NCBI GenBank assembly: GCA_002269645.1
Contig: NIVC01000109.1
Span: forward strand, 908,780-972,779
DNA: 64,000 nucleotides
DNA from: Macrostomum lignano
Taxonomy: Eukaryota
Reading direction: 5' to 3'
The first letter of the stretch is position 1, and every line of letters begins with the position of its first letter. Shown piece by piece: positions 1 to 53,654 of this stretch. The translations under genes and the position numbers were made by a program. The notes under the pieces were generated by a model. It did not search any database. It saw only the letters and a program-made list of their open reading frames with translations, and was not told where the DNA came from.

Positions 1-905
1 AGAGAGCAGAGACAGGTAGATGGGATTGGAGAGACAGATAGATGAGAGAGCAGAGACAGGTAGATGGAATTGGAGAGACAGATAGATGAGAGAGCAGAGA
101 CAGGTAGATTGGATTGGAAAGACAGGTAGATGAGAGAGCAGAGACAGGTAGATGGGAGAGCAGAGACAGGTAGATGGGAGAGCAGAGACAGGTAGATGGG
201 AGAGCAGAGACAGGTAGATGGGATTGGAGAGACAGATAGATGAGAGAGCAGAGACAGGTAGATGGGATTGGAGAGACAGGTAGATAGGAGAGCAGAGACA
301 GGTAGATGAGAGAGCAGAGACAGGTAGATAGGAGAGCAGAGACAGGTAGATGGGAGAGCAGAGACAGGTAGATGAGAGAGCAGAGACGGGTAGATAGGAG
401 AGCAGAGACAGGTAGATGGGAGAGCAGAGACAGGTAGATGGGATTGGAGAGACAGGTAGATGAGATAGAAGAGACAGGTAGATGGGATTGGAGAGACAGG
501 TAGATGAGATAGAAGAGACAGGTAGATGAGAGAGCAGAGACAGGTAGATGGGATTGGAGAGACAGGTAGATGAGATAGAAGAGACAGGTAGATGGGATTG
601 GAGAGACAGATAGATGGGAGAGGAGAGACAGGTAGATGGGAGAGGAGAGACAGGTAGATGGGAGAGGAGAGACAGGTAGATGGGAGAGGAGAGACAGGTA
701 GATAGGAGAGCAGAGACAGGTAGATGGGAGAGCAGAGACAGGTAGATGGGAGAGCAGAGACAGGTAGATGGGAGAGGAGAGACAGGTAGACGGGAGAGGA
801 GAGACAGGTAGACGGGAGAGGAGAGACAGGTAGATGGGAGAGGAGAGACAGGTAGATGGGAGAGGAGAGACAGGTAGACGGGAGAGGAGAGACAGGTAGA
901 TAGCA
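1..905. repeat. Purine-rich minisatellite (about 21-27 bp units), truncated by window edge
   Basis: Core GAGAGCAGAGACAGGTAGATG(G) repeated with GGATTG and GAGGA variants until unique sequence begins at about 905. Confidence 0.95.
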
Positions 906-2774: not shown

Positions 2775-2800
2775 CCGGAAGTGCGACGATGAATTATAAA
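2775..2800 (+). promoter_or_regulatory. ETS-type site and TATA box of TNF-like gene 1
   Basis: CCGGAAGT at 2775-2782 and TATAAA at 2795-2800, 116 bp upstream of the ATG at 2911. Confidence 0.5.
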
Positions 2801-2910
2801 TAACAGCCGCGAAATGGTTTCAACTGTGACATGAATATCCGTTTTGTGGTATTCTCTACTCCTAAAGAAAAATATTTCAGCTAGACAATTTGATTGATCA
2901 AACAGTCAAA

Positions 2911-4447
2911 ATGCCCAGCATTCTGCTCGACACAATCAGGACCGTTCTGGTGATGACTGCGGTCCTCAGTCTGGTGGCTGCGGCTCCGGCTACATCGAAA
3001 ATGGTGACCAGCCTCTTGCCTTCTTACATAGGAAATTTGGAATTCAGGCACTTTAAGCGACATTGTCAGACAACCGGCGAGAGGCATTGCTGCCCATTCC
3101 GCCGACTCCCCTGAGCAAGCGCGCGGACACGTACGCTGTCATAAGCACAGGCTCACACTCACACAGGGCCCCTGACTTATTTATCGTTAGGCATGGGTTG
3201 GCCCCCAGGGGCGTTAATTGCACGAGCAGAGCCAAGCCAAGATTACAATTTAGCCCCAAATTAATGTGACATCAGACCACTGGGCTGCGGCCCTCGGAGA
3301 TTAGGGGGATGCTTTTGCTGTGTCAGATTTCAACAAATATAATAGAAAGTCATTTTATTCGCTTCTTCCGCAGATTTCGCTCGAGCTGAACTACGCCAGC
3401 CTGCCTTCGTGCTCGGAGACCCCGAATGGAAGTCTTTGCGAGCCGAACTGCACTCAGAGAAACAACTTCTGCCCCTTCATCATCGGCAGAGGTTAGCGAC
3501 CAATTGACGTCTCTTTTGCCACTCTGATCCCTTATCAATTTTGGACTTTCAAATAATCTAGAAAGTGGACTTTTTGAAATTAAGGTACATGCTTACTACT
3601 AGGGGGTTGAAGCCTAGTGGTCAGAGCTTCGGACTCCCGAATTGAAGGTCGGGGGTTCGATTCCCGATCCCACTGGAACGATTTGTGTCCTTGAGCAAGA
3701 CACTTAACTCTGCATTGCTTCAGTTCACCCAGCTGTAAAATGGGTACCAGCATTAGCTGGGGTAATTGAGGATGTGTGTGGCGACCCCCCAGCCCTTGGA
3801 CTGAACAGCCGTACGCAGCCTTCAGATGCGCCGCGCAATAGCTGCAGCTGAGCTGTCGGTTGCACATCTGGCCCAATTGGGGCAGGTGTAATCAATAATT
3901 ATTATTATCAATATTATTATTACTATTATTAGTAAGCTGCAGCATGTCATTCTCATTGTTTGAAAACTTAGAAAAATCCATTTAGCACAGACAAACTAAC
4001 AGAATCAATGATTCTTCAATTGCAGAGACAGAATGGAATCCGAGCACTCGTATTGTCGTGGGCCCCTGGGCGCCGACGCCAACCTCTGTTAAGAAATGGC
4101 CAGGCGACACATTCGAGCTGGCCGACAACAGCTCGGCGCTGAAGGTGCTGCAGTCCGGGCTCTATCACGTGACCGCCCAGCTGCTGGTGCGGCTGCCGGG
4201 CAAGTTCGCCGCCAGGACAATGGAATGCGCCCTGAGAGTCCAAGACAAGGTGGTCACCGCTGGCCGAGTGCTGAGCGCGGAGCACCCGCTCACCTGTCTG
4301 ACGGTGGGCGTGCTGCGACTCACGGCAGGGGAGCAGATCCAGGTGGCCCTGCTCCGTCTGGACAGCGTCCAGTACAGCGACGACTTCCAGATCTACGTGT
4401 ACCGCAAACGACTCAACTTCTTCCAGGTGACCCGAATCGGGTCTTGA
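2911..4447 (+). CDS. TNF-superfamily ligand-like gene 1, predicted secreted, 210 aa, 3 exons
   Basis: Exons 2911-3003, 3374-3491, 4026-4447 (phases 0 and 1, total 633 nt). N-terminus MPSILLDTIRTVLVMTAVLSLVAAA is signal-peptide-like. Exon 2 is ISLELNYASLPSCSETPNGSLCEPNCTQRNNFCPFIIGR. Exon 3 has TNF-homology motifs LKVLQSGLYHVTAQL, GVLRLTAGEQIQV, LNFFQVTRI. AATAAA at about 4558. First donor GTGACC is weak. Confidence 0.8.
3602..3932 (+). mobile_element. tRNA-derived SINE, full length, in intron 2 of TNF-like gene 1
   Basis: Pol III A-box-like TAGTGGTCAGAGC and B box GGTTCGATTCCC. Central block GTGTCCTTGAGCAAGACACTTAAC...CAGCTGTAAAATGGGTACC resembles CORE/Meta-type SINE domains. (ATT)n tail. 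3' half recurs at 53500-53654. Confidence 0.85.
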
Positions 4448-4819
4448 CAAAAAAGCCGAATTAACAAATCACTCACGCTGGCTGCCTTGTTGCAATTCTT
4501 AGAGATTATCCAAGCATAATACGTTGCTAGATATTCCTCATGACGTTTCTACATGCAGAATAAATATTTGTTTCAAATAGCCCGCAAATTTGTTTTATTT
4601 AAATTGGCCCCAAAAATATAACAAAACTTTATGTGAGATAACGATACAGAATCTTTTACTACAGTCAAATCTCTCTGCTTCATGCATGCTACTCGAGGAT
4701 TGCCCGAGAGCACCGACGAACGCACATTGCTGAGCGTACAAGAATTGCATTGGCAAGAGGGTTGCACAAGTTGGTTATTTTTATCATTCTTATTGCTGAT
4801 CTTGCACACTCACGAGTAC

Positions 4820-6025
4820 AGAATTGAATGATTCCCGCACTCGTGAACGTAAAGGAATCCCATTGTCGGATGATTCATCGTGCAGGAATGCACAAAACCG
4901 TGCAGGAATGCATTTCTGCGCCTAATGCTTTTTCAGTGAGATTTTACCATAGACATCCATTCCTGCACGCAAAAGAGTGCAAGAATGCCATTCTTGCATG
5001 GAAAATCAGCCGACAATGATTTTGTCTATGGCAAAATCATCTTTATGTCTAATGCATCATAGGTATTTTCAGAAATAGTATTTTCAGAAATTGAAAAGAC
5101 AACAAAAAAGAAAGTGCAGGATTGATTTTTTCTTGTTTGATTCTACGTGCAGGAATGTATTTAAGCGTGCGGAAATGCTTTCGTCTATGGTAAATCTTCA
5201 TTTAAAATGTTACTGCTTACAGTGCAGAATGCATTTTCATTCCTGCACGGTAATAGACTGAATTGTATTTCAATAAGAACAAACAAGTGACAAAAAATGA
5301 GTAACAACATTAACGTATTAAAGCAATGGAATTCTCATCTTCTTTGTTGACGCCGACGTAGTCGGCTCACTTGTTAACAGCACTTCAGACTGTGCCGCAC
5401 TCCGAATGCCGACCGATGAAGTCTCAGAGCCAGTTCCGTCAAGAGCAATAGTCAACTGTCCACTCATGCCCACCATTATAGTGTCTCTTCGTTTTCGTTC
5501 ACTTCGATAGAAATTTTCACATAAACGTAAGAATAATTCTATCAGATACAATGTGCAAGCTTTGCTACGTTGTGTACACACAGTGTAACGGTTTTCAGCT
5601 TACCTTGTGCCCCGTCACTTACACAGACACGTAGCGCAGGTCTATCAATGGACCAACCAAATTTTTGTCACTCAGAGTGGCCATGTTTGATTTCAATTTT
5701 CTAAATAACAAACACTATTATCACTACGTAACTAACTCCAGCCATTCTTCTTCTTTTTTTATTCGGCGTGCAGGATTGAATGATTCCCGTGAAGGAATCC
5801 CATTGTCGAATGATTCATCGTGCAGGAATGCACAAAAACCGTGCAGGAATGCATTTCTGCGCCTAATGCTTTTTCAGTGAGATTTTACCATAGACATCCA
5901 TTCCTGCACGCAAAAGAGTGCAAGAATGCCATTCTTGCATGGAAAATCAGCCGACAATGCTTTCGTCTGTGGTAAAAATCCTCGTGAATTCTGTTGAAAC
6001 AGTTTTTGTCTATGGTAAATGTTTT
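4820..6025. repeat. Unclassified repeat: about 190-bp direct duplication (4822-5019 and 5776-5959) with GTGCAGGAATGCA modules in both orientations
   Basis: Near-identical blocks ...GTGCAGGAATGCATTTCTGCGCCTAATGC...CAGCCGACAATG; further modules at 5140-5260. Confidence 0.75.
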
Positions 6026-7167
6026 TTTTTCATGTGGGACCCCCCCCCCCAGCAAGGGGACTGCGTCCCCTTACCCCGCTTCCCGCTGCACCTCCCTTCC
6101 ACTCTAATTGATCCAACAAGAATAATATTCCAGCACGAAAACGAGTGCGACTGTGGCAAAGGCACGAGTGTTAAGCCGATTCTGAGCGCATTAAACGCCA
6201 ATCGAGTGATTAAATGAGGGGTTCAATAGCATTGCAGCAGCATTGCATTCATGATATATATTTCTCGTGAATTAAGTGACTCTAGAAATACGCGATCACG
6301 AGATGCAGATGCAGAGTGGAGGCGGAGGAGACCACCCATTCCGCTAGCCTCTGGTGACCAATAACGAAGTGATGTCGCTCAGGAGAACCCGGCGGTTCGC
6401 GGTCCTCCTCACCGGCGTTGGGGAAGAACTCAGCTCTCCCCTCGTCCCTGAGGTACCGGTGTTAGGCTTTGCAATCTCCGTGCGTTTGCAGTCTCCGCCC
6501 AGAGATTGCAAGACAAATGTGACTCTGCCTTGCGCTCTCCAGTCCCGGGTGAACTGTAATTGTAATTGCGCAATTTATACTTCATTCTCTCTGATGCTCA
6601 TTGTATTTTAAAAGCTATTTATTAAGAATTTAGAAAGCTGCAAATGTGACTCAGGTATTTGTAGTGTCAAGTAAAGACCGACATGGCAAAGGCGACTTCG
6701 AAATGATCAGGGCTCTCTTCAAGCGAGCAAGACACTGAGTTGAAACTGTCAATAGATAATCAATAACGAAGTGTAATAAAAATGTAAAATCAAAGCGAGA
6801 TTTACTGAAACCGAGAAATAAATAATAAGTTTTAAACAGCTGGTGCTTTTAGTCCTGCCTCATTATGTAACAATCATTTCTATAAACTTCTTTCCGTTTC
6901 AAGTGCATTCGTGAAAATGGTCACCTGTTGCAGAACTCCGTTGCAGAACTATGATACAAAAATGAGTACCGTAAATAGATCAATGATGTAATCTTTATGA
7001 CACCTGAAGAGCCTCAAAACGGCAATGACTGGTGTGACGTAAAACTTCAATCGCGAATGACGTTCCCCATCACGCTAACGTTCCACTTTCAAAAGCGGTC
7101 ATCTCAGCAAGTGTGCATCGGAAGACTTGCTCTATTGTCTGTGCTGTACTCAACTCTCGCTCTCGCA

Positions 7168-7248
7168 GGGAAATTCCGTGGCAACCTTAGAACGAAAAAA
7201 TTACTTTGATGCTTACGTTTTTATTACCTCGTTGTAGAATTATATAAG
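7168..7248 (+). promoter_or_regulatory. kappaB consensus site and TATA box of TNF-like gene 2
   Basis: GGGAAATTCC at 7168-7177 matches GGGRNNYYCC; TATATAAG at 7241-7248, about 110 bp upstream of the ATG at 7352. Confidence 0.55.
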
Positions 7249-7351
7249 AAATTCGAGGCAAGCTGTAAATTTGCTCAGACATCTCAAGTCATCTTCTGAT
7301 CTTTCGCCATCTTGCAAGAAAAACAGCAAACAGCGCCACTAAAGCTGCAGA

Positions 7352-8251
7352 ATGTCTTCTCCAAGCGAGTCGTTGATTGCAGTCGAAGCTGGCAGCACAT
7401 CGGTGCCAACTGAGCCACCGACTGCAGCTCGCAGAGTCGCCAAGTCCCAGCAAAGTCTCTCGAAAATTGGCGTGATGGCGGCCTGCTTCATCTTCTGCTC
7501 GGTGGCTGCGGTTGCTGGCCTGACCAAACTGCAGCAGCCGCCACAGCCTGCGGACTGCTCTGGCTTGAGCTGTGAGCCTGCGGTTCCAATGGTGAGCAAA
7601 GAGCATAGTGGCATTCTCATTTTCAGGATGCCTCGCAGACTGTCCAACACTCAGCAACCCCCGGACTTTCATTGCAGGTGTCGCTTCGAATCGCCTACGA
7701 GCGGCTGCCTCCATGTCTCCGGGGCGGCTTCAATGGAAGCCTCTGCAACCAGAAAGGCATTGTCCATAGCAGAGGTAAGCAGCACTGCCACTCACTCAGG
7801 TATGCGGATGTTGGACTGACGGGCTCTGTTGGTTCTTGCAGATGAAGACAACGACATCACCGTGGGCCCGTGGGCGCCCGTCAGTAGAGGCGATTCTTTT
7901 GCGAGGAGCGCCTTCGCTCTGATCGATGACGACTCCGCCCTGGAGGTGCTGCTGGGAGGGCTGTACCACGTGACCTCTCAGCTGCTGGCTCAACTGCCGG
8001 CCGCCGACAACGCGCACAGAATTGTCGAGTGCGCGCTCAGAGTCAATGGCACCGCCATGTCAGTGGTGAAATCACCGAGTACGGGCGCTCCTCTCACCTG
8101 CACCACAGTCGGTGTGTTCAGGCTGGAAGCCGGCGACAGGATCTGGGTGTCGCTGAGGTACGATGAGAGCGTCAATGGGCAGAACCGGCTTTCCATCGGT
8201 GCCAGACGGCCGGCAATGAACCATTTTCAGGTGACCCGACTCGGCCGGTGA
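7352..8251 (+). CDS. TNF-superfamily ligand-like gene 2, type II membrane, 248 aa, 3 exons
   Basis: Exons 7352-7591, 7678-7774, 7842-8251 (747 nt; donors GTGAGC, GTAAGC). Internal hydrophobic anchor IGVMAACFIFCSVAAVAGL. Exon 2 is VSLRIAYERLPPCLRGGFNGSLCNQKGIVHSR. TNF domain motifs LEVLLGGLYHVTSQL, GVFRLEAGDRIWV, NHFQVTRL. Confidence 0.88.
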
Positions 8252-8616
8252 CCGCATCCCGCCTTGCCAATTAGGCTACAGAACCTACCTCACCTTTCTG
8301 ATCGCAAACTTGTTTTCTTAGAACAGAAACTTCTCATTTATTCTGGCATGCAAAGTTTTTGTCTGCTGCATTTCAGACGGAGTGTTCGGAGAATTCCAGT
8401 ATTCAGAGTTTCTGTTACAGAACTGCAATGCCTCATGATATTCTGCAGTTGAAAATAAAATTGACTTTAAGTACACCTTAAATTGACTTGATTTTATTTA
8501 AGTTTCAACTTTTTTAAACGTGTTAAAATAGTAGAAAACTGACTAGCAACCAGCGCCCCCCGTTGGCGAGCCAACAAAGAATGTAATACAAATTTTTGAA
8601 TAAACTACATGTAGCC

Positions 8617-8970
8617 TCAGCCTTGACATCTCAGCAATTCTCCCCGTAAGCATTGACATCTCAGAAATTCCCCCCGTAAGCCTTGGCATCTCAGCAATCC
8701 CCCCATAAGCCTTGACATCTCAGCAATTCTCCCCCCATAAGCCTTGACATCTCAGCAATTTCCCCCATAAGCCTTGACATCTCAGCAATCCCCCCATAAG
8801 CCTTGACATCTCAGAAATTCCCCCCGTAAGCCTTGGCATCTCAGCAATCCCCCCATAAGCCTTGACATCTCAGCAATTCTCCCCCATAAGCCTTGACATC
8901 TCAGCAATTCTCCCCCCATAAGCCTTGACATCTCAGCAATTTCCCCCATAAGCCTTGACATCTCAGAAAT
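8617..8970. repeat. 31-33 bp minisatellite
   Basis: About 11 copies of TAAGCCTTGACATCTCAGCAATTC(T)CCCCC(C)A with variable C-run length. Confidence 0.93.
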
Positions 8971-10032
8971 TCTTTCTAAAACTACCTGACACTTCTTTTT
9001 TGACATGACGCTTCTTTCATGTCTGACATGACGCTTCTTTCATATTTGACGACGCTTTTTTATGTTTTGGCTATTCTCGATCCTGTGAGCCTTGACCTTT
9101 CAACAATTCCCACCTGTAAGCCTTGAACTCTTCGCGAATTCCCCCTAACCCTAAAGCCTGGACATTTCAGAAATTCTCCCCAAGTGTTACAGCATTAGCG
9201 ATCCCCCCAAGTCTTGACATTGTAGCAATTCCCAAATGAATCTTCTATGTTCGACATGACGCTTCTTTTATGTTTTATGTTTTCTTGACTCTTCTTTTTT
9301 GTGACTTGACGCTTCTTTTATTGAATTTATCAATAAAACAACTATTAATCATTCAGTTTATCAATATATCAACTATAGTAATCACTCAGTTTATCAATAT
9401 ACTCAGCAACATTGGAAAAGTCGTGAGCAATTTCTTTTGGACTTGATAAATTCTTTTGGATCTTTCGTATTCTGAAATAAAAGATACGAGAAAAAACTGA
9501 GGGGTTGCTTTAATCCGTCCAACCCTCGCACATGATCTATGTATCAAATATCAATTTATCAGTTTATTAGCATAACGGAATACCAATCCACAAGCTATTA
9601 ATAGACGATATACAATACGATAGCAACATATCAATATATTATCAGCAACTATCCGATCTTCGCGAGTTCATTTCTTTCTAAAGTAAACTATTTTCAAGTC
9701 CATCGATGCCAGAAACCTTCGCCTTCATTCCGTCAGATGTGGCGCAATCATATTTCTAAAAGCGTTGAAAAGAACTATTAGAAATTTCGAAAACTGCCAA
9801 CTGCTAAAGATAATAACGACTGTTTCTAAAAATAGAATCAGTGGCTGTCCGCAGGCTGCCGCTGTGCAGAATCTCGCCAACAGACAGCTGCTAAATTTAA
9901 CCATCGGCGCACAATTGGACTCGCGAACTTGCCTCGAGCCTGGCTATTCTTCTGCAGCCTGGCCCGGCACAGACTTCCCAGTTTAGCTCGAGCTGGATTC
10001 TATTTTTGTTGCAACAAGATTTGGCACACAAT

Positions 10033-10098
10033 GGAACGTCCCCTCGGCATCCGTTGGCTGTTGAGGGAAGCAAAGCAGTTCGCCAAACTCTATAAAAG
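10033..10098 (+). promoter_or_regulatory. kappaB consensus site (reverse orientation) and TATA box of TNF-like gene 3
   Basis: GGAACGTCCC at 10033-10042 reads GGGACGTTCC on the minus strand (GGGRNNYYCC); TATAAAAG at 10091-10098, 110 bp upstream of the ATG at 10201. Confidence 0.55.
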
Positions 10099-10200
10099 AG
10101 GCGACAGCTTCGACTAAAAAAAATTCAACCAAAAATTGCTTGCAAAGCAGAAGCAGACTTGCAAAGACAGCGGAATAAACATCTTCTCTTCAAAGCAACA

Positions 10201-11091
10201 ATGTCCCACCAGGCTCAATCGCTTCTTCTGGAGGCTGGACACGCTGAGCGTCAGCAGCCGTCGGAGCCGTCCGCGGTGCCCGCCGCCGGTCCTAAACCGG
10301 CCGCCGAGACGCGCCGTCATCCGCGGCTGCTGCTAGCGGCGGTCGCCGTGGCAGCCTGCGTCCTGGGCGCTCTGGCCATCGCTGGCGGAGCCACTCAGGC
10401 GGCCACAGCTGAAGCCAGCAGCAGCGGTCATGACTCGGCCAATGTGAGTCATTTTGTGAGTTATTCTTTCTCTTCGAGAAGTCCTTGGCCGCAGAGGCTC
10501 CCCCGTCCGCTTTTCAGTGGATTCTGCTCCGACTGACGCACAAGGGTCTGCCCCCGTGCTCATCAAACTACAGCGGAACTCTCTGCTGGGGAGCTGGGGA
10601 GATCAATAGCAGAGGTGAGCTTGCTGAATATTCGCAGTCAACCGAGTGCAAGCCCCAACGACATTTACCTTTCGTCTCCGATTCCAGAGGGCACCAACAA
10701 TGTCTTGGTGGGGCCATGGACCTCAGACGGTGGGCCTGCAGCACCCAATTTTGTCCTGCTAAATGACAGCTCGTTCGGGCTACGGGTCCTGAGCCCCGGA
10801 CTCTACCAGGCAGTGCTCCAGCTGACGGCTCAGAACCACAACGGCAGCTCTCCGGTCAATCTTGAGTGCCGAGTCAACCTCGACGGCAGAGTCGCCATCG
10901 CTGGCAGGGCGATGAACTCCGAGTCGCCGCTAACCTGCTTGGCTGTGGGCTTCCTGCGCCTGTCGCCAGGAGACCGCCGGGTCAGCGTGTCGCTGAATCG
11001 ACAGAGGGGCCTGCACGGCCAGAACCAGTTCAGGATCAGGCTGGGGGCAAATGGCCTCAACTACATGCAGTTGATGAAAGTAGGAAATTGA
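10201..11091 (+). CDS. TNF-superfamily ligand-like gene 3, type II membrane, 247 aa, 3 exons
   Basis: Exons 10201-10443, 10518-10614, 10688-11091 (744 nt; donors GTGAGT, GTGAGC). Anchor LLLAAVAVAACVLGALAIAGG. Exon 2 is WILLRLTHKGLPPCSSNYSGTLCWGAGEINSR, 97 nt as in gene 2. TNF motifs LRVLSPGLYQAVLQL, GFLRLSPGDRRVSV, NYMQLMKV. Confidence 0.88.
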
Positions 11092-11614
11092 CAAGTCTGA
11101 CTGATTGACATTGTGCTACTCTCTATAGCTGACTCAAAATAATTTTTATGAATTAGACAAGTAAGCCGGCACTAGTTAGCACGCTTTGTTATTGAAAGCT
11201 TATCAGGTATCTTTTGCTTGAAAATATTTTTACGCTCGAGTATTCACGCCCACGATATTTTCAGGTAAAGAACTATTCAAATTAAACAATTTTTAAGACC
11301 AAAAATAGAGAATTCTTGCCCTATTTTTATCCGGAAGTATTTTGTTCAATACGAATGTGATGTACTAGTAAGACCAGTTTTAATAGCCTTCTAATTCGTT
11401 TTCGTTCTGCTTACTCCCGCACTGCTGTACAAATCCAATACAATGAAACTGCACGAGCCAGCTGCACTGTAGGCGTTCATTTTGTTATAGAATACATTTT
11501 TCATAATGTCACCATAACTCCGGCAGTCTATCGTTTCACTGCAACCAAACAATTGACTCAGTTTTTTTGCAAGTACCCAGGGTACTTTAGAGTGTTTGCT
11601 GAGTCAATCAGCGA

Positions 11615-13100
<1,486 letters not shown>

Positions 13101-13101
13101 A

Positions 13102-36381: not shown

Positions 36382-39060
36382 TCAATCAGATACAATTTCG
36401 CCCTCTTCTAGTTCGATTTCATCATCAAAGTATAAAAGTTCACCGTTTAAATGCGAGGAAGCACAGTTTCTATCTGCTGTGGCCATATTTATAACAGCCT
36501 TGTTAATCTTTGATGAAGATGATTGGCTAGATGAGCCTTCATTTCGACGCTTTCTATGTTGATGTAGATCTGAAGTTGACGAGTGTTTAGACTTGGATTT
36601 GTCTGATACAGAAGTAGGTGCGCTGGACTTTCTGTGCACTGAAGTACCTGAGACGAATGTACGTGCGCTGGACTTCCTGTGCACTGCAGTACCTGAGACG
36701 GATGTATGTGCGCTGTACTTTCTTTTCAGCAAGGCAGTTGAAGCAGACGTAGATGATTTGTGCTTACTTTTAACCGACGCGGTTTTGGCTAACCTTTGAG
36801 TATTAACGATAGATTCCTTTTGTTTAGAGGCAGACTTCATGGGTTTATATGACTTTTTCCGTGCTAACGCATCCGAGGCAGCGATCAGCTCGGGTTTGTT
36901 TTTTGTCGCGTCAATTTTGACAGAAGTCGGTGTGGTCGATTCGCTACCAAGGGTAGAGGTACTTGCAATCGATTTTTTAACCGACGCGGATGTGACAGGA
37001 ACAGAGCTGTTAGAAGTTGAAATTCTAAAAGAGCCAAACAAAGAAGCAGCAGTACCGGAAGCAGAGTTTCTGAAAGCGTCTAGCAACGAAGTAGAAGCTT
37101 TGGAAGCTGTTGTTACAACAGGGGTAGAGCAGCGGGTAGAGCTCAACGATGAAGCAGCAGCTGTGACAGAAGAAGCAACAGTGGTGGAGCTGCAGGTACC
37201 GGTAGAGCTAAGCAATGAAGAAGCTGTGGCATTAACGGAATATTTTAAGTTTGGTGCAGCCTGTAGCAAATTATCCGAACCGGTTGCAGAGGAAGTGGTG
37301 GTCACAGCTGACGCAACTGTTACTTCATTAATAGACGGTGCAGCTGTTCCAGAGTCAACTACTGAAGTCGAAGTCGTGACACGTGAGCTGGGTATCGCAG
37401 GATTTATTACAGAAGCTTTACATGTAGAAGTTCCAGAAGCTAAGTCAGCAGACATTGTTTCCGACAGACGGATTTGCATAGGACAGGAAGCCTTAGCAGG
37501 AAGAGGCGGCAAAGGCTGTGCGAATAAGTCCATAGGAGGGAAAATGTTTAAATGAGGCGGCACAGGCAATGATGGGGCTACTCCTAGATTTCCTGAAAAG
37601 CAAGCCGCCATTACTGGGCAAGTCGGAAGTGGTGACGACTGAGGCGGCGGTTGGAGAAATACAACTTGAGCAGAAGAACCGCAGTTAGAGGAGGTTGAGA
37701 CAGAAAATGGCATCGACATGAGAGGCGGTATCGCCATCGGACTTGATTGCTGAACGTGACCGTACGGTGCAGCGCCCGATGGTTGCGTTGATTTCAAGAC
37801 TGTCGAATAGTTTAGCAGGCCGGAGTCGCTGCTGCTGAAGCCTACCTGGCAAGACGACGCTGCTGATTCCGATGAAGGGCGCACTAATGAGGACATCATC
37901 GGCGGCACCTGCAGACGATCGCTAGCAGCTTCTATAGAAGACTGCATGATTGGAGCTACGGCAGGTGGGACGGACGCTGTAGTAGATTCAGAGACAGTAA
38001 CAGCAGCGGTTGATGTAGCAGGGGTCGATCGGCGTCCGATGAACTCCAGCGCCTGCAGCTTAGACCAGCGGCTTCTCAGCTGGGTAACAATAATATCCTC
38101 AATGCCTTGAATAACGTTAAGCAAATCGCATATATTCGGAAGCGGCGAACTGAAACCACTGAGCTCTGTTAACTCGTGCAACGCTTCAACGCATAGGCTG
38201 CACCAGACTGGCCAAGACTTCCGCACGCTGACAACGTCCGGCTGCCGATGCTCACCGGCGGCCAAGAGCGGTAGAAGCGCCGGCTCCAAAGCGATGGAGG
38301 AGAATGCGCGAACCAACTCGACGCGCAGTAGGTGGCGCAGCTCAGAGTCTGGCAGCCGGATCTGAGGAGCAAACATGATGAGGGCGAATCATTATTAAGT
38401 AAACGTGCAATTCTTAAATTCTTAATTCAATTTTAGCCTTACGGTCTGCAACTAGTGCTACATAGACGCAGGTGGGGCTTCAGGCACTGTCGCAAATCAA
38501 GGCGAAAGTCTATACACAGCCAGCGAGTAGGAAAGCACTGTAGTTAAATGCTCATACCACTGACCCCTGAATGCGTAAATGCGCACCTTACAATACGCAA
38601 ACGCAAGCACACAGCGTAAAGTGGCCGGACTTTTCAACGTTAGGCAGTGTGCATGTGCACAAAGCCCAAGGAGCCGACCCATATCGTACATTCCCCGGAC
38701 CCATTTCAGCTCACGAGAAGCAGATTTCCATGCACGGTCGAGCGGAATCAAAGCCAGTGGCTTTGGCGCGAGAGTGGACATGCTACCGATTTCTTTGCTA
38801 CTTTCCGTGATGTCGGATAACGACTTTCAACTATTGTAATGCGTCAAATAAATGCCAAAACTGCTCACCTGTAACTCGCGGAACTCAAGTGCAGCCGCCT
38901 GTTTCAACTGTTCTGCGGCCTCCTTGCTGGCGACGTTGCGCAGACTCCAGCGTACAGTCAGCAGCATGCGTAGAAAACGCGTGTCTGATCTAAATGAGGC
39001 GGATTTCTTGTTATAGGCTGCCGAGGCCATGTCCAAGTCACGCTGCAATATGTAAACCAT
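36382..39060 (-). CDS. Unknown protein, about 723 aa: helical N-terminal domain, long S/T/P-rich region, basic region, C-terminal EEGEI motif
   Basis: Exon 39060-38869 (donor CAG|GTGAGC) joins in phase 0 to 38361-36382 (acceptor CTCCTCAG|ATC). Basic K/S/R-rich segment near the end; terminal DDEIELEEGEIVSD. An acceptor just before the ATG means upstream exons may exist. Confidence 0.7.
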
Positions 39061-41079: not shown

Positions 41080-44000
41080 TTAGGAGAGCCTGGCGAGCTT
41101 AGCTCCATGGTGATGGCGTGATTGATAGGGCTCGTCTGCGGCTGCGGCCAACGGCGATATTGAATCTTCTGAGTCTGACTGACGGCCCGATCGCCGGGGT
41201 GGCCGCTGGTTTGGCCTCCGATCAGGTCGATGAATATTTGGTCGCTGGTTTGGTCGCTGCAGTGGTTTCCTACGCAGATGGACAGAAATACGATGATTAC
41301 GGGTGATTTTCTACTAAAATAGTCAAGCGCACAGAGAATGCTAATAGAGGACAGGGTATAGGCTAGGATAAAAGAGCTGAAACCAGGACAGAACCTCAGT
41401 AGTTTCGGGTGGTGGCAACCAGGATAGAACCCCAGTAGTTTCGGGTGGTGGCAACCAGGATAGAACCCCAGTAGTTTCGGGTGGTGGCAACCAGGATAGA
41501 ACCCCAGTAGTTTCGGGTGGTGGCAACCAGGATAGAACCCCAGTAGTTTCGGGCGGTGGCAACCAGGACAGAACCCCAGTAGTTTCGGGTGGTGGCAACC
41601 AGGATAGAACCCCAGTAGTTTCGGGTGGTGGCAACCAGGATAGAAACCCAGTAGTTTCGGGTGGTGGCAACCAGGACAGAACCTCAGTAGTTTCGGGTGG
41701 TGGCAACCAGGACAGAACCCCAGTAGTTTCGGGTGGTGGCAACCAGGACAGAACCCCAGTAGTTTCGGGTGGTGGCAACCAGGACAGAACCTCAGTAGTT
41801 TCGGGTGGTGGCAACCAGGACAGAACCTCAGTAGTTTCGGGTGGTGGCAACCAGGATAGAACCCCAGTAGTTTCGGGTGGTGGCAACCAGGACAGAACCA
41901 CAGTAGTTTCGGGTGGTGGCAACCAGGACAGAACCCCTGTAGTTTCGGGCGGTGGCAACCAGGACAGAACCCCAGTAGTTTCGGGTGGTGGCAACCAGGA
42001 CAGAACCACAGTAGTTTCGGGTGGTGGCAACCAGGATAGAACCCCAGTAGTTTCGGGTGGTGGCAACCAGGACAGAACCACAGTAGTTTCGGGTGGTGGC
42101 AACCAGGACAGAACCCCAGTAGTTTCGGGTGGTGGCAACCAGGACAGAACCCCAGTAGTTTCGGGTGGTGGCAACCAGGACAGAACCCCTGTAGTTTCGG
42201 GCGGTGGCAACCAGGACAGAACCCCAGTAGTTTCGGGTGGTGGCAACCAGGACAGAACCCCAGTAGTTTCGGGTGGTGGCAACCAGGACAGAACCCCAGT
42301 AGTTTCGGGTGGTGGCAACCAGGACAGAACCCCAGTAGTTTCGGGTGGTGGCAACCAGGACAGAACCCCAGTAGTTTCGGGTGGTGGCAACCAGGACAGA
42401 ACCCCAGTAGTTTCGGGTGGTGGCAACCAGGACAGAACCCCAGTAGTTTCGGGTGGTGGCAACCAGGACAGAACCCCAGTAGTTTCGGGTGGTGGCAACC
42501 AGGACAGAACCCCTGTAGTTTCGGGCGGTGGCAACCAGGACAGAACCCCAGTAGTTTCGGGTGGTGGCAACCAGGATAGAAACCCAGTAGTTTCGGGTGG
42601 TGGCAACCAGGACAGAACCCCAGTAGTTTCGGGTGGTGGCAACCAGGACAGAACCTCAGTAGTTTCGGGTGGTGGCAACCAGGACAGAACCCCAGTAGTT
42701 TCGGGTGGTGGCAACCAGGACAGAACCCCAGTAGTTTCGGGTGGTGGCAACCAGGACAGAACCCCAGTAGTTTTGGGTGGTGGCAACCAGGATAGAAACC
42801 CAGTAGTTTCGGGTGGTGGCAACCAGGACAGAAACCCAGTAGTTTCGGGTGGTGGCAACCAGGACAGAACCCCAGTAGTTTCGGGTGGCAACCAGGACAG
42901 AACCCCAGTAGTTTCGGGTGGTGGCAACCAGGACAGAACCCCTGTAGTTTCGGGTGGTGGCAACCAGGACAGAACCCCAGTAGTTTCGGGTGGTGGCAAC
43001 CAGGACAGAACCCCAGTAGTTTCGGGTGGTGGCAACCAGGACAAAACCCCAGTAGTTTCGGGTGGTGGCAACCAGGACAGAACCACAGTAGTTTCGGGTG
43101 GTGGCAACCAGGACAGAACCTCAGTAGTTTCGGGTGGTGGCAACCAGGATAGAACCCCAGTAGTTTCGGGTGGTGGCAACCAGGATAGAACCCCAGTAGT
43201 TTCGGGTGGTGGCAACCAGGATAGAACCCCAGTAGTTTCGGGTGGTGGCAACCAGGATAGAACCCCAGTAGTTTCGGGTGGTGGCAACCAGGATAGAACC
43301 CCAGTAGTTTCGGGTGGTGGCAACCAGGATAGAACCCCAGTAGTTTCGGGTGGTGGCAACCAGGATAGAACCCCAGTAGTTTCGGGTGGTGGCAACCAGG
43401 ATAGAACCCCAGTAGTTTCGGGTGGTGGCAACCAGGATAGAACCCCAGTAGTTTCGGGTGGTGGCAACCAGGATAGAACCCCAGTAGTTTCGGGTGGTGG
43501 CAACCAGGATAGAACCCCAGTAGTTTCGGGTGGTGGCAACCAGGATAGAACCCCAGTAGTTTCGGGTGGTGGCAACCAGGATAGAACCCCAGTAGTTTCG
43601 GGTGGTGGCAACCAGGATAGAACCCCAGTAGTTTCGGGTGGTGGCAACCAGGATAGAACCCCAGTAGTTTCGGGTGGTGGCAACCAGGATAGAACCCCAG
43701 TAGTTTCGGGTGGTGGCAACCAGGATAGAACCCCAGTAGTTTCGGGTGGTGGCAACCAGGACAGAACCCCAGTAGTTTCGGGTGGTGGCAACCAGCAGCG
43801 CAATAAATCTGTAGAGATCCTACCTTTCACTGAACCATCGCTGATTCTGCGCACTTCTTGTTGGCGAGCGAGGCGTCTGCTCACGGAGGACTTCGTCTCG
43901 ATTACTCATAGTTCGACTTTTGACGCCGCTGTACCAGCCCAGCCGCGTCTTGGCCTCCGCAACCATGGAATCAACGTCGACACTTTCCAGACGCTTGTTC

Positions 44001-46166: not shown

Positions 46167-47069
46167 TGCAGAAATATTACAGATGCTATTTCATTGTCTG
46201 CAGTCTATGAGAATCATGCAATAATATACGACTTCAATCAAGATATAGATTATTATGGAAGTACACATGCCTAGAACACGCAAACCTATTTATTAGCAAT
46301 GAAGCTGGAACTAATTCAAAATGTGATATTATTGCTAGCCATACCAGTAGAACCAAAAAAATCGGTTAATCTCCAACAGAGATAAAAATCAAACTACGAG
46401 CCGTACAGCTGTACTCAACAACATTAGAAAGTCACCACCTTTGAGAGTGCGCAGTAAATTATAGTTTATTATTGACTTTTGAGTGAAGCAACTTGCGCCA
46501 CGCGACGCAGAGTTGAGCTGGGTGAGGAGGGATTGGGAAGAGCGGAGGGCGAAGATTGGATAGATTGAAGCTTCCGCCCGGTTTTCATTGTTTTTTCAAG
46601 CATTTTTTAATATCAAAATGGTTGGCAAGGAGATAGACGCTGGTCGAAAGACACTGCTCACTGGGGTAAAGGGTGGCGACTTTTTAATGTTGCTGAGTAT
46701 ATGATGACTGCCAGCATAGAGAGTAATGAATGAAGCACATAAACAGATTTGCGTAAAATAATACTTTATTTAGCTGTCTAGAGCACAACCTCAAATTCTT
46801 CTTACAGATGTACTACTTTTAAGTTGAATTCATGCAAAATATGCTGCCTAATCGTATCAGCGATAACTAGATCTTGCACTAGCAAGACTTTATTGCCACC
46901 GATCCGAAAAAAGCTAAAGACGAATAAAACAAACTTTCTCGGCCAGATAAGTCCAGATAAGACAACAGACAAGCGAGGGGTGTGTTAAACATTGGCCACA
47001 CAAAAATTAAAGTATAAAACTGTCGACTGGATTGTCCAAATCGAAAGCATTGCAAGCCCAACAAGAGCC

Positions 47070-53499: not shown

Positions 53500-53654
53500 A
53501 TTGAGGATGTGTGTGACGATCCACCAGTCCTTTGGTGGAGTGAACAGCCGTACGCAGCCTTCAGATGCAGCGCGGAATTAGGTAAGGCTGAGCTGTCGGT
53601 TGCACGACTGCCCATAGGCTGGTGTAATCAATTTATTGTTATTATTATTATTAC
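53500..53654 (+). mobile_element. 5'-truncated copy of the tRNA-derived SINE
   Basis: TTGAGGATGTGTGTG...TGAACAGCCGTACGCAGCCTTCAGATGC...GCTGAGCTGTCGGTTGCAC...GGTGTAATCAAT plus ATT tail, matching 3775-3930. Confidence 0.85.

What the first reader, a model, noticed from the sequence alone, without database searches (positions are those of the whole stretch)
2911..11091. Tandem cluster of three divergent TNF-like ligands sharing one exon plan
Seen: three same-strand genes share intron phases (0 then 1) and the identical junction AGA G|GT. Exon 2 is 97 nt in two of them. All have VGPW at the start of the domain, GLY..(V)..QL, invariant EC and LTC cysteines, G.(L/F)RL..G(D/E) and a terminal N.(F/M)Q, yet overall identity looks low, so the duplications are old. 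Established: these motifs fit the TNF homology jelly-roll domain, with C1q as the alternative. Inference: a lineage-specific cytokine cluster with diversified receptor-binding loops.
Basis: partly seen in the sequence, partly recalled or inferred. Interest (0 to 1): 0.72.

Follow-up and report, generated by a model that had tools for sequence, protein, structure and literature searches.

The report
Three tandem divergent TNF-ligand genes
The region holds three neighbouring, complete-looking animal genes for very divergent TNF-family signalling proteins, two membrane-anchored and one apparently secreted; this is a real but fairly ordinary lineage-specific gene cluster.

Summary
Three same-strand, three-exon genes lie at 2911-4447, 7352-8251 and 10201-11091. 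All use GT-AG introns in phases 0 then 1, and the exon-2 donor is AGAG|GT in all three. Each has a TATA box 110-116 nt before its ATG, its own stop codon and a poly(A) signal.

The products (210, 248 and 247 aa) share 33-47% identity in a roughly 135-aa C-terminal beta-sandwich. Two are type II membrane proteins. The first has lost the cytoplasmic tail and looks secreted.

The TNF reading is supported but rests on remote homology:
- Pfam TNF scores are below threshold (13.5 and 11.7 bits, and nothing for the third; cut-off 23). C1q gives no hit.
- A profile of the three matches only TNF ligands in the PDB, with EDA best.
- hhalign against hymenopteran TNF-domain proteins gives 94% probability over 129 columns.
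- AlphaFold models match EDA, 4-1BBL, Eiger and CD40L best.

An exhaustive search of 1.84 billion representative proteins found no relative below E=1e-10, and the host species was not identified. kappaB-like sites lie 58-73 nt upstream of the TATA boxes of genes 2 and 3.

Tandem, lineage-specific TNF-ligand expansions are well documented in oysters, amphioxus and tunicates. These are new, very divergent members of a known kind.

The parts
2795..2802 (+). g1 TATA box (TATAAATA), 116 nt upstream of the ATG. An ETS-like ACCGGAAGTG lies about 20 nt before it.
   Evidence: sequence read
2911..3003 (+). g1 exon 1 (93 nt). Encodes a short hydrophobic N-terminus, MPSILLDTIRTVLVMTAVLSLVAAAPATSKM, which looks like a signal peptide or anchor. 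There is no cytoplasmic tail.
3374..3491 (+). g1 exon 2 (118 nt, ends in phase 1 at AGAG|gt). Encodes the Cys-containing pre-domain module LPSC...GSLC plus two extra Cys.
4026..4447 (+). g1 exon 3. Encodes the TNF-homology-like beta-sandwich from VGPW to NFFQVTRIGS, then the stop codon.
   Evidence: (PF00229 13.5 bits)
4559..4564 (+). g1 AATAAA poly(A) signal, 112 nt after the stop codon.
7168..7177 (+). kappaB-like site GGGAAATTCC, 73 nt upstream of the g2 TATA box.
   Evidence: only 8 distinct GGGRNNYYCC sites in 64 kb
7241..7248 (+). g2 TATA box (TATATAAG), 111 nt upstream of the ATG.
7352..7591 (+). g2 exon 1 (240 nt). Encodes the cytoplasmic tail (net +4 next to the membrane), the signal-anchor/TM segment at residues 39-57, and the stalk.
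7678..7774 (+). g2 exon 2 (97 nt, phase 1 donor AGAG|gt). Encodes the LPPC...GSLC module.
7842..8251 (+). g2 exon 3. Encodes the TNF-homology-like domain, then the stop codon.
   Evidence: (PF00229 11.7 bits)
8454..8459 (+). g2 AATAAA poly(A) signal, 203 nt after the stop codon.
10033..10042 (-). kappaB-like site GGGACGTTCC, 58 nt upstream of the g3 TATA box.
10091..10098 (+). g3 TATA box (TATAAAAG), 110 nt upstream of the ATG.
10201..10443 (+). g3 exon 1 (243 nt). Encodes the cytoplasmic tail (net +3 next to the membrane), the TM segment at about residues 43-64, and the stalk.
10518..10614 (+). g3 exon 2 (97 nt, phase 1 donor AGAG|gt). Encodes the LPPC...GTLC module.
10688..11091 (+). g3 exon 3. 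Encodes the most divergent TNF-homology-like domain of the three, then the stop codon.
   Evidence: no Pfam hit on its own
11281..11286 (+). g3 ATTAAA candidate poly(A) signal, 190 nt after the stop codon.

Best explanation
The region is a tandem array of three separately transcribed paralogous genes. They encode very divergent ligands of the TNF superfamily, and their closest detectable relatives are in the EDA/Eiger branch.

g2 and g3 are type II membrane proteins: an N-terminal cytoplasmic tail, a signal-anchor, a short stalk, and a C-terminal TNF-homology jelly-roll. g1 has lost the tail, so its hydrophobic segment sits at the extreme N-terminus. It is probably secreted.

Inferred mechanism: the conserved beta-strand core assembles into trimers. 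The variable loops after the GPW motif, between predicted strands C and D, and between G and H give each paralogue its own specificity for cysteine-rich TNFR-type receptors (Wengen, Grindelwald or TNFR-like) encoded elsewhere in the genome. These receptors would signal through the NF-kB, JNK or cell-death pathways.

The kappaB-like sites just upstream of the TATA boxes of g2 and g3 suggest Rel/NF-kB-inducible, immune or stress-responsive transcription.

Shown here: the gene structure, the paralogy, membership of the C1q/TNF fold superfamily, the topology signals and the promoter elements. Inferred: trimerisation, receptor binding, inducibility and cytokine function.
For: Gene structure and transcription signals:
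- Complete three-exon models with canonical splice sites at homologous positions.
- Each gene has its own TATA box 110-116 nt before the ATG, its own stop codon and a poly(A) signal.
- The exons carry a coding-type composition and substitution pattern.

Homology to TNF ligands:
- Pfam: TNF PF00229 is the only family hit (13.5 and 11.7 bits). C1q does not appear even at E<=10.
- A profile of the three proteins against PDB sequences gives four hits at E<=10, all TNF ligands: three EDA entries (E=0.025-0.053) and GITRL at E=1.3.
- The exhaustive HMM search finds hymenopteran type II proteins P0005 and P0006 at E about 5e-4. These score 22.9 and 18.6 bits on Pfam TNF and share the GPW, F.L, GLY..Q, C and GD columns.
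- hhalign of the three-sequence profile gives 90.9% probability against the Habropoda THD protein and 94.2%, E=1.1e-7, over 129 columns against nine hymenopteran THD proteins.
- The joint profile hits APRIL/BAFF, Eiger (E=2.7e-9), EDA, CD40L, TNF and TRAIL in the PDB, and no C1q.

Structure:
- The AlphaFold model built from window sequences only (pLDDT 56.7) matches EDA-A1, 4-1BBL, CD40L and Eiger best.
- The model built with 10 sequences (pLDDT 72.1, pTM 0.70) matches EDA-A1 at E=5e-8 and Eiger 6i50 at TM 0.60, rmsd 3.7 A. No C1q entry is in the top 50.

Topology and other features:
- Hydrophobic 19-mers lie at residues 39-57 (g2) and 43-61 (g3), with net +4 and +3 charge on the N-terminal side.
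- There are no Gly-X-Y repeats.
- Invariant residues are concentrated in predicted strands.
- Two of only 8 distinct kappaB-consensus sites in 64 kb fall within 100 nt upstream of the g2 and g3 TATA boxes.

Literature: tandem lineage-specific TNFSF expansions are documented (PMC12843592).
Against: - No protein reaches Pfam's gathering score for TNF (cut-off 23 bits), and g3 has no Pfam hit at all.
- g1 and g3 on their own find nothing meaningful in the PDB by sequence.
- The core (strands B-G) is as similar to two uncharacterised BclA_C/C1q-like proteins: hhalign 95.4% over 77 columns and 87.8% over 79 columns. Sequence alone therefore places the domain in the C1q/TNF/BclA superfamily more firmly than in the TNF branch.
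- The better structural model was built on an alignment dominated by hymenopteran THD proteins, which may pull it towards TNF.
- No TNFR-type cysteine-rich domain is in the window.
- No furin-type shedding site is present.
- There is no transcript evidence.
- The kappaB-site argument is post hoc.
- The exon plan is not shared with the Cotesia THD gene.
Confidence: 0.78

Rival explanations
1. The three proteins belong to the C1q/BclA-like branch of the same fold superfamily. They would act as secreted or surface-bound recognition (lectin-like) molecules rather than as receptor-activating TNF ligands.
For: - hhalign of the three-sequence profile against P0004 gives 95.4%, E=1.7e-8. P0004 has a weak BclA_C match and comes from a Logan assembly contig.
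- hhalign against P0002 gives 87.8%. P0002 has weak BclA_C and C1q matches and comes from a JGI metagenome.
- In the exhaustive search P0002 scored higher (42 bits, 2 domains) than the THD proteins (36 bits).
- C1q-domain proteins are hugely expanded as pattern-recognition molecules in some invertebrates (PMC10672478).
Against: - Those alignments cover only strands B-G (77-79 columns). The alignment to THD proteins covers 129 columns, including the GPW region and the C-terminal strand.
- Pfam C1q and BclA_C give no hit at E<=10.
- PDB sequence-profile hits are TNF ligands only.
- There is no collagen-like Gly-X-Y stalk.
- g2 and g3 have a type II signal-anchor with the positive-inside pattern, which is the TNF-ligand architecture.
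- The improved model has no C1q entry in its top 50.
Confidence: 0.13
2. The gene models are wrong or the genes are not functional. The loci would be pseudogenes, unexpressed duplicates, or parts of one longer fused transcription unit.
For: No transcript data could be consulted. None of the window's proteins tried is on record in the public protein collections. A three-THD, three-TM 'single gene' has been annotated in the ostracod Darwinula stevensoni (bioRxiv 10.1101/2024.07.27.603686), so automatic annotation does produce fused readings of such arrays.
Against: - All three reading frames are intact across three exons, with canonical splice sites at homologous positions.
- Each unit ends in its own stop codon and has its own TATA box at a conserved distance from its ATG, plus a poly(A) signal.
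- The units are 2-3 kb apart, separated by repeats.
- Protein-level conservation with saturated synonymous change and GC3 enrichment indicates long-term purifying selection.
Confidence: 0.06

Closest known systems
Ectodysplasin (EDA) / arthropod Eiger branch of the TNF ligand superfamily, including uncharacterised hymenopteran THD proteins (Habropoda, Cotesia, Neodiprion, Prorops)
   Same: - Type II membrane topology with a C-terminal THD.
- Best sequence-profile and fold matches.
- Shared columns: G-P-W before strand B', F.L, G-L-Y...Q in strand C, a Cys at the start of strand F (LTC here, NTC in EDA, VSC in Hymenoptera), and G-D after strand F.
   Different: - Only 20-26% identity.
- Pfam TNF is below threshold.
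- No furin site in the stalk, whereas the hymenopteran proteins carry RSRRR.
- The partner cysteine is 23 residues upstream (EC) instead of about 14.
- A separate exon encodes an extra Cys-containing module, LP.C...G[ST]LC.
- The exon plan differs. The Cotesia gene has four introns (phases 1, 1, 0, 2), two of them inside the THD. Its phase-1 intron is 2 residues before IGPW, against 8 residues before VGPW here.
Vertebrate TNF-LTA-LTB tandem cluster (established knowledge, not tested here)
   Same: Both are arrays of three closely linked TNF-ligand paralogues. In each, one member (LTA there, g1 here) has an N-terminal signal-like sequence and no cytoplasmic tail, while the others are type II membrane proteins.
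   Different: This is independent duplication, not orthology. The lymphotoxin heterotrimer (LTalpha1beta2) is experimentally established, whereas heterotrimer formation here is pure speculation.
Lineage-specific tandem TNFSF expansions: 23 genes in Crassostrea gigas, at least 24 in Branchiostoma floridae, up to 14 in tunicates (PMC12843592); and the three-THD 'dsEiger' of Darwinula stevensoni (bioRxiv 10.1101/2024.07.27.603686)
   Same: Tandem duplication of TM-plus-THD units and rapid divergence between paralogues. The Darwinula case has exactly three TM-THD units in a row.
   Different: Here each unit clearly has its own promoter elements, start codon, stop codon and poly(A) signal, so these are three genes and not one multi-THD protein. 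No sequence relative closer than E about 5e-4 was found in the protein libraries.
gC1q / BclA C-terminal domain proteins
   Same: Same jelly-roll superfamily. The core strands B-G align with comparable hhalign probability.
   Different: No collagen-like stalk, no Pfam C1q or BclA_C hit, type II anchor, and a shorter alignment span.

Membership tests
TNF ligand superfamily (TNFSF; THD, Pfam PF00229) | Sequence match to the curated THD profile at Pfam's gathering score (23 bits) | tested here: not met
   g1 scores 13.5 bits, g2 scores 11.7 bits and g3 has no hit. TNF is nevertheless the only Pfam family that appears.
TNF ligand superfamily (TNFSF; THD, Pfam PF00229) | Remote homology to accepted THD proteins by profile methods | tested here: met
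   hhalign gives 94.2%, E=1.1e-7, over 129 columns against hymenopteran THD proteins. One of those proteins carries a PF00229 annotation. PDB profile hits are TNFSF only.
TNF ligand superfamily (TNFSF; THD, Pfam PF00229) | Ten-strand jelly-roll THD fold | tested here: met
   The AlphaFold model has pLDDT 72.1 and pTM 0.70. Foldseek's top hits are EDA-A1 (5e-8), 4-1BBL, Eiger (TM 0.60), CD40L and TNF. The same ranking came from the model built from window sequences alone. These are medium-confidence models.
TNF ligand superfamily (TNFSF; THD, Pfam PF00229) | Type II membrane topology (N-terminal cytoplasmic tail, signal-anchor, C-terminal ectodomain) | tested here: met
   g2 has a TM segment at 39-57 and g3 at 43-61, with net +4 and +3 charge on the N-terminal flank and 0 and -2 on the C-terminal flank. 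In g1 the hydrophobic segment is at the N-terminus, which suggests a secreted form. This rests on hydropathy only; no dedicated predictor was available.
TNF ligand superfamily (TNFSF; THD, Pfam PF00229) | PROSITE-type TNF signature around G-[LIVMF]-Y in strand C (pattern PS00251 recalled from memory) | tested here: not met
   The strict pattern fails in all three, because H or Q follows the Tyr. A version relaxed at the two positions after the Tyr matches g1 only. The G-L-Y...Q-L core is invariant.
TNF ligand superfamily (TNFSF; THD, Pfam PF00229) | Assembly into compact homo- or heterotrimers | not testable with these tools
   No multimer prediction was available. Conservation of the strand C, F and H residues is compatible with trimer formation.
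TNF ligand superfamily (TNFSF; THD, Pfam PF00229) | Binding to TNFR-type cysteine-rich-domain receptors | not testable with these tools
   No TNFR CRD pattern occurs in the window. The rest of the genome is not available.
C1q domain family (Pfam PF00386) | Match to the gC1q profile | tested here: not met
   No C1q hit at E<=10 for any of the three. No C1q chain appears in the PDB profile searches.
C1q domain family (Pfam PF00386) | N-terminal signal peptide followed by a collagen-like Gly-X-Y or coiled-coil stalk | tested here: not met
   No run of four or more G-x-x repeats. g2 and g3 have internal signal-anchors instead.
BclA C-terminal domain (Pfam PF18573) | Match to the BclA_C profile or to BclA-like proteins | tested here: inconclusive
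   No Pfam hit. However, hhalign gives 95.4% and 87.8% against two proteins with weak BclA_C matches, over strands B-G only.

The most novel reading that the evidence does not exclude
The three genes could represent a previously unrecognised, deeply divergent TNF-ligand subfamily of a poorly sampled animal lineage. Its mark would be a disulfide-tethered N-terminal extension encoded by its own exon (LP.C...G[ST]LC).

The cluster might work as a lymphotoxin-like system. The tail-less, secreted g1 would be held at the cell surface, or change receptor specificity, by forming heterotrimers with the membrane-anchored g2 and g3. That would be a convergent parallel to LTalpha/LTbeta, and a separate-gene counterpart of the proposed heterotrimeric three-THD Eiger of Darwinula.
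Probability: 0.15. Interest if true: 0.55.

Novelty: new member of a known kind. Interest (0 to 1): 0.35.

Why it matters
TNF ligand and receptor systems control cell death, immunity and tissue patterning in animals, and their repertoire changes quickly between lineages. This cluster adds three intact ligands that are divergent enough to fall below Pfam's TNF score cut-off. It therefore shows how such genes are missed in genome surveys and in paralogue counts.

The arrangement offers a natural set for studying how ligand topology and receptor specificity diversify after tandem duplication. It has one tail-less, probably secreted member next to two membrane-anchored members, each with its own promoter, and two of those promoters carry kappaB-like sites. 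The clear gene boundaries here also argue for caution with annotated 'multi-THD single genes' in other invertebrates.

The finding is not conceptually new. Tandem TNFSF expansions are already well documented.

Tried and rejected
**Searches that found nothing**
- A word-seeded homologue search with g2 found nothing at E<=0.01.
- A back-translated pattern scan of JGI metagenome contigs with the domain profile found no confirmed relative. An exact 33-mer from g2 also found nothing.
It returned no hit at E<=1e-10 although the ORF has a 243-bit SACS Pfam match.
- Exact-sequence look-ups of three window ORFs found no record. The source species remains unidentified.
- Rfam and tRNA scans of the window were empty.

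**Hits set aside**
- P0001 and P0003 from the exhaustive search are long repeat proteins and were set aside as spurious.

**Tests with a negative or inconclusive result**
- A shared exon plan with the Cotesia congregata THD gene (L001) is not shared, apart from a same-phase intron a few codons away.
- No k-mer of 7-9 nt is shared by all three promoters.
- No fourth copy or pseudogene is in the window.
- No TNFR-type CRD is in the window.
- The SINE-like insert in g1 intron 2 resembled, from memory, a conserved SINE central domain. The MetaSINE paper holds no sequence in its text, so no family was assigned.
- Model coordinates could not be read, so the disulfide geometry (EC-LTC and LP.C-G.LC) could not be checked.

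Full report
**Observation**

- g1: 2911-3003, 3374-3491, 4026-4447 (210 aa).
- g2: 7352-7591, 7678-7774, 7842-8251 (248 aa).
- g3: 10201-10443, 10518-10614, 10688-11091 (247 aa).

All three are on the + strand and all six introns are GT...AG. Exon 1 is 93, 240 and 243 nt, giving phase 0. Exon 2 is 118, 97 and 97 nt, giving phase 1. The exon-2 donor is GCAGAG|gt in every copy.

The motifs are also present: VGPW, GLY....QL, EC, LTC, G.[LF]RL..G[DE] and N.[FM]Q. VGPW, GLY....QL, LTC..VG..RL..G[DE] and an additional exon-2 motif LP.C(4-6)G[ST]LC each occur exactly three times in the six-frame translation of the whole window, against roughly zero in shuffles.

Within-window tblastn gives E=1e-29 for g1-g2 (47% identity in the domain), 6e-20 for g1-g3 (33%) and 2e-15 for g2-g3 (33%). 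It finds no fourth copy.

**Are these real, separate genes?**

- Each unit has a TATA box 110-116 nt upstream of its ATG: TATAAATA at 2795, TATATAAG at 7241 and TATAAAAG at 10091.
- Each has its own stop codon and an AATAAA or ATTAAA 112-203 nt downstream.
- Exonic GC3 is 0.69-0.78, while intron GC is about 0.5 and the surrounding DNA is 0.40-0.49.
- Between paralogues, third codon positions differ most. Synonymous change is saturated and dN/dS is 0.44-0.74. This indicates old duplications kept under purifying selection.
- The units are 2-3 kb apart, separated by repeats.
- The g1 introns are longer (370 and 534 nt, against 67-86 nt in g2 and g3). Intron 2 of g1 carries a SINE-like insertion.
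- No transcript data could be consulted, so the junctions rest on paralogue conservation and canonical signals only.

**Protein anatomy**

g2 and g3 have an N-terminal tail of about 40 residues, then a strongly hydrophobic segment (g2 39-57, g3 43-61). The N-terminal flank carries net +4 and +3 charge and the C-terminal flank 0 and -2. That is the positive-inside pattern of a type II signal-anchor.

g1 lacks the tail. Its hydrophobic segment starts at residue 4 and is followed by AAAPATS, which looks like a cleavable signal peptide. g1 is therefore probably secreted.

No stalk has a furin-type R-x-[KR]-R site, and there are no collagen-like Gly-X-Y repeats.

Exon 2 encodes a small module conserved in all three, [IVL]xLx[LI]...LP.C...G[ST]LC, with two extra Cys in g1. 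Exon 3 encodes the beta-sandwich from VGPW to the C-terminus, with two invariant cysteines (EC and LTC) 23 residues apart.

**What the domain is**

Pfam shows only TNF (PF00229), below the 23-bit cut-off: 13.5 bits for g1, 11.7 for g2 and nothing for g3. C1q (PF00386) does not appear even at E<=10.

A profile of the three proteins against all PDB sequences returns four hits at E<=10, all TNF ligands: EDA-A2 at E=0.025, two EDA-A1 entries, and GITRL. g1 and g3 alone find nothing meaningful.

The exhaustive HMM search of 1.84 billion representative proteins found only six hits at E<=1e-3 and none at E<=1e-10.
- Two are repeat proteins and spurious.
- Two are type II proteins of Hymenoptera: Prorops nasuta and Neodiprion. 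They score 22.9 and 18.6 bits on Pfam TNF.
- Two are uncharacterised proteins with weak BclA_C or C1q matches, from a metagenome contig and a Logan assembly contig.

Seeding a search with the window proteins plus the two hymenopteran ones returned eight more hymenopteran proteins. One of them, from Habropoda, carries a PF00229 annotation and is named 'THD domain-containing' by UniRef.

hhalign of the three-sequence profile gives 90.9% probability against the Habropoda protein. Against nine hymenopteran proteins it gives 94.2%, E=1.1e-7, over 129 columns. The shared columns are G...GPW, F.L, GLY..Q, E, C, GD and Q.

The joint profile then hits APRIL/BAFF (7.5e-11), Drosophila and Spodoptera Eiger (2.7e-9 and 4.6e-9), EDA, CD40L, TNF and TRAIL in the PDB, and no C1q.

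**Structure**

An AlphaFold model from the three window sequences alone has low confidence (pLDDT 56.7). It already matches EDA-A1 best (1.6e-5), then 4-1BBL, CD40L and Eiger. Cerebellin-1 appears at rank 13 and C1QL3 at rank 39.

With ten sequences the model reaches pLDDT 72.1 and pTM 0.70. It matches EDA-A1 at 5e-8, then 4-1BBL, Eiger (6i50; TM 0.60, rmsd 3.7 A over 155 columns), CD40L, TNF, GITRL and TRAIL. No C1q entry is in the top 50. That alignment is dominated by THD proteins, so the second result is not fully independent.

**Limits of the TNF assignment**

The same three-sequence profile aligns to the two BclA_C/C1q-like proteins at 95.4% and 87.8% probability, but only over 77-79 columns covering strands B-G. 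Membership of the C1q/TNF/BclA jelly-roll superfamily is therefore firm.

Placement in the TNF-ligand branch rests on these points:
- the longer alignment, which includes the GPW region and the last strand;
- the exclusively TNF hits in Pfam and the PDB;
- the type II architecture;
- the lack of a collagen stalk;
- the animal genomic context: a DUF3715/TASOR-like exon, an SLC22-like transporter and a sacsin-like gene in the same window.

I put this placement at about 0.8.

The exon plan does not add support. The Cotesia congregata THD gene has introns in phases 1, 1, 0 and 2, two of them inside the THD. Its second phase-1 intron lies 2 residues before IGPW, whereas the window genes' phase-1 intron lies 8 residues before VGPW. 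The position is near and the phase is the same, but the two are not demonstrably homologous.

**Mechanism (inferred)**

Invariant residues are enriched in predicted strands: 24 of 74 positions, against 8 of 59 in loops, Fisher p=0.014. The stretch after GPW has 3 invariant positions out of 16, all within the GPW motif itself. Strand E, the C-D loop and the long G-H region have no invariant positions. The indels fall in non-strand positions. This fits a conserved trimer-forming core with diversified outward loops, as in TNF ligands, although any beta-sandwich family tends to look this way.

The most likely function is a set of trimeric ligands for TNFR-, Wengen- or Grindelwald-type receptors encoded elsewhere. 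No CRD pattern is in the window.

The consensus GGGRNNYYCC has only eight distinct sites in the 64 kb. Two of them lie 73 and 58 nt upstream of the TATA boxes of g2 (GGGAAATTCC at 7168) and g3 (GGGACGTTCC at 10033, minus strand). By a rough post-hoc estimate the chance of this is below 1e-3. It suggests Rel/NF-kB-responsive transcription. g1 has no such site but has an ETS-like ACCGGAAGTG next to its TATA box.

**Comparison with what is known, and novelty**

Tandem, lineage-specific TNFSF expansions are well documented: 23 genes in the Pacific oyster, at least 24 in amphioxus, and up to 14 in tunicates through independent tandem duplications (PMC12843592).

A preprint surveying 148 invertebrate proteomes reports 290 TNFSF homologues. 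It also reports an ostracod 'single gene' with three TM-plus-THD units, proposed to form a heterotrimer (bioRxiv 10.1101/2024.07.27.603686). The present array has the same three-unit layout but unambiguous gene boundaries.

From established knowledge, the vertebrate TNF-LTA-LTB cluster is a functional parallel. LTA is secreted through a signal peptide and is held on membranes only as a heterotrimer with LTB.

What is unusual here is the degree of divergence (below Pfam's cut-off, with no close relative in 15 billion proteins), the exon-2 Cys module, and the tail-less first copy. I classify the finding as new members of a known kind, of moderate interest.

**Organism**

The source species was not identified. 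The window's proteins are absent from the searched collections, and metagenome scans were empty. The gene content indicates an animal. TNFSF is restricted to metazoans according to PMC12843592. The short 67-86-nt introns and the hymenopteran best hits are only weak pointers.

Noticed in passing
window 3580-3900 (g1 intron 2); partial copy at 53500-53632: A SINE-like insertion accounts for much of the larger size of g1 intron 2 (534 nt, against 67-73 nt in g2 and g3). It has a tRNA-like head that ARAGORN does not call as a tRNA. A second, partial copy in the window is 81% identical over 137 nt. From memory it resembles a conserved metazoan SINE central domain, but no family could be assigned.
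   Followed up: partly
window 4816-5036 and 5768-5977: A direct repeat, 90.5% identical over 222 bp, flanks about 730 bp between g1 and g2. This could be the terminal repeats of a small mobile element, or a local duplication.
   Followed up: partly
window 8619-8972: A 30-bp minisatellite (about 12 copies, higher-order period 150) sits between g2 and g3. Degenerate copies continue to about 9230.
   Followed up: no
window 2-901, 1410-2512, 11615-13101, 17849-18289, 19641-20028: The cluster is embedded in unusually dense simple repeats: a 22-mer array, (CTAA)x276, (TAC)n of about 1.5 kb directly after g3, (AGT)n and (GACA)x97. These create long artefactual ORFs on both strands.
   Followed up: partly
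window 16068-17417 and 24115-24864: The same 42-bp satellite unit (TTGGCTAGATTAGCAATCCATTCTATTCCTTCATCAGTGATG) forms two separate arrays about 7 kb apart, at 95-96% unit identity.
   Followed up: no
window 41381-43795 (ORF 41341-43884, minus): A 36-bp tandem array (67 copies, 97% identical) stays open as an 847-aa ORF. The ORF gives strong Pfam scores to MgtE_N and FliG_M (E=8e-58 and 3.5e-30). These look like artefacts of a repeated 12-residue peptide rather than real domains.
   Followed up: no
window 55647-63187 (minus): A sacsin-like gene: an 851-aa ORF with a SACS domain (243 bits) and a 1711-aa ORF ending in a HEPN domain. The two ORFs overlap by about 150 nt in different frames, which points to a short intron or a frameshift. 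The word-seeded protein search returned nothing for it despite the strong Pfam match.
   Followed up: partly
window 46992-48791 (+): An apparently intronless SLC22-like major-facilitator transporter gene (Pfam Sugar_tr 96 bits). The likely start is at Met27 of the ORF.
   Followed up: partly
window 28818-29537 (minus): An exon-like ORF with a DUF3715 domain (32.7 bits, above the cut-off) and GC3 of 0.66. Nearby Q-rich and low-complexity ORFs at 26908-28548 may belong to the same gene.
   Followed up: no
window 36382-38376 (minus): A 664-aa ATG-to-stop ORF with no Pfam match and no record in the protein collection. GC3 is only 0.44, so its coding status is uncertain.
   Followed up: partly
window 14499-14927 (minus): A GC3-rich (0.72) ORF just downstream of the cluster. 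It encodes a signal-peptide-like start (MPIDRRIALICSLLLLMASAAFAAP) followed by a Q-rich segment, possibly the first exon of a secreted protein. It has no family match.
   Followed up: no
L001 3001-6585 (Cotesia congregata, CAJNRD030001118.1): The hymenopteran THD gene has five exons with intron phases 1, 1, 0 and 2. The protein is labelled 'Protein of unknown function' or 'uncharacterized' in the sources, although it belongs to the Eiger/EDA-like TNF family.
   Followed up: yes
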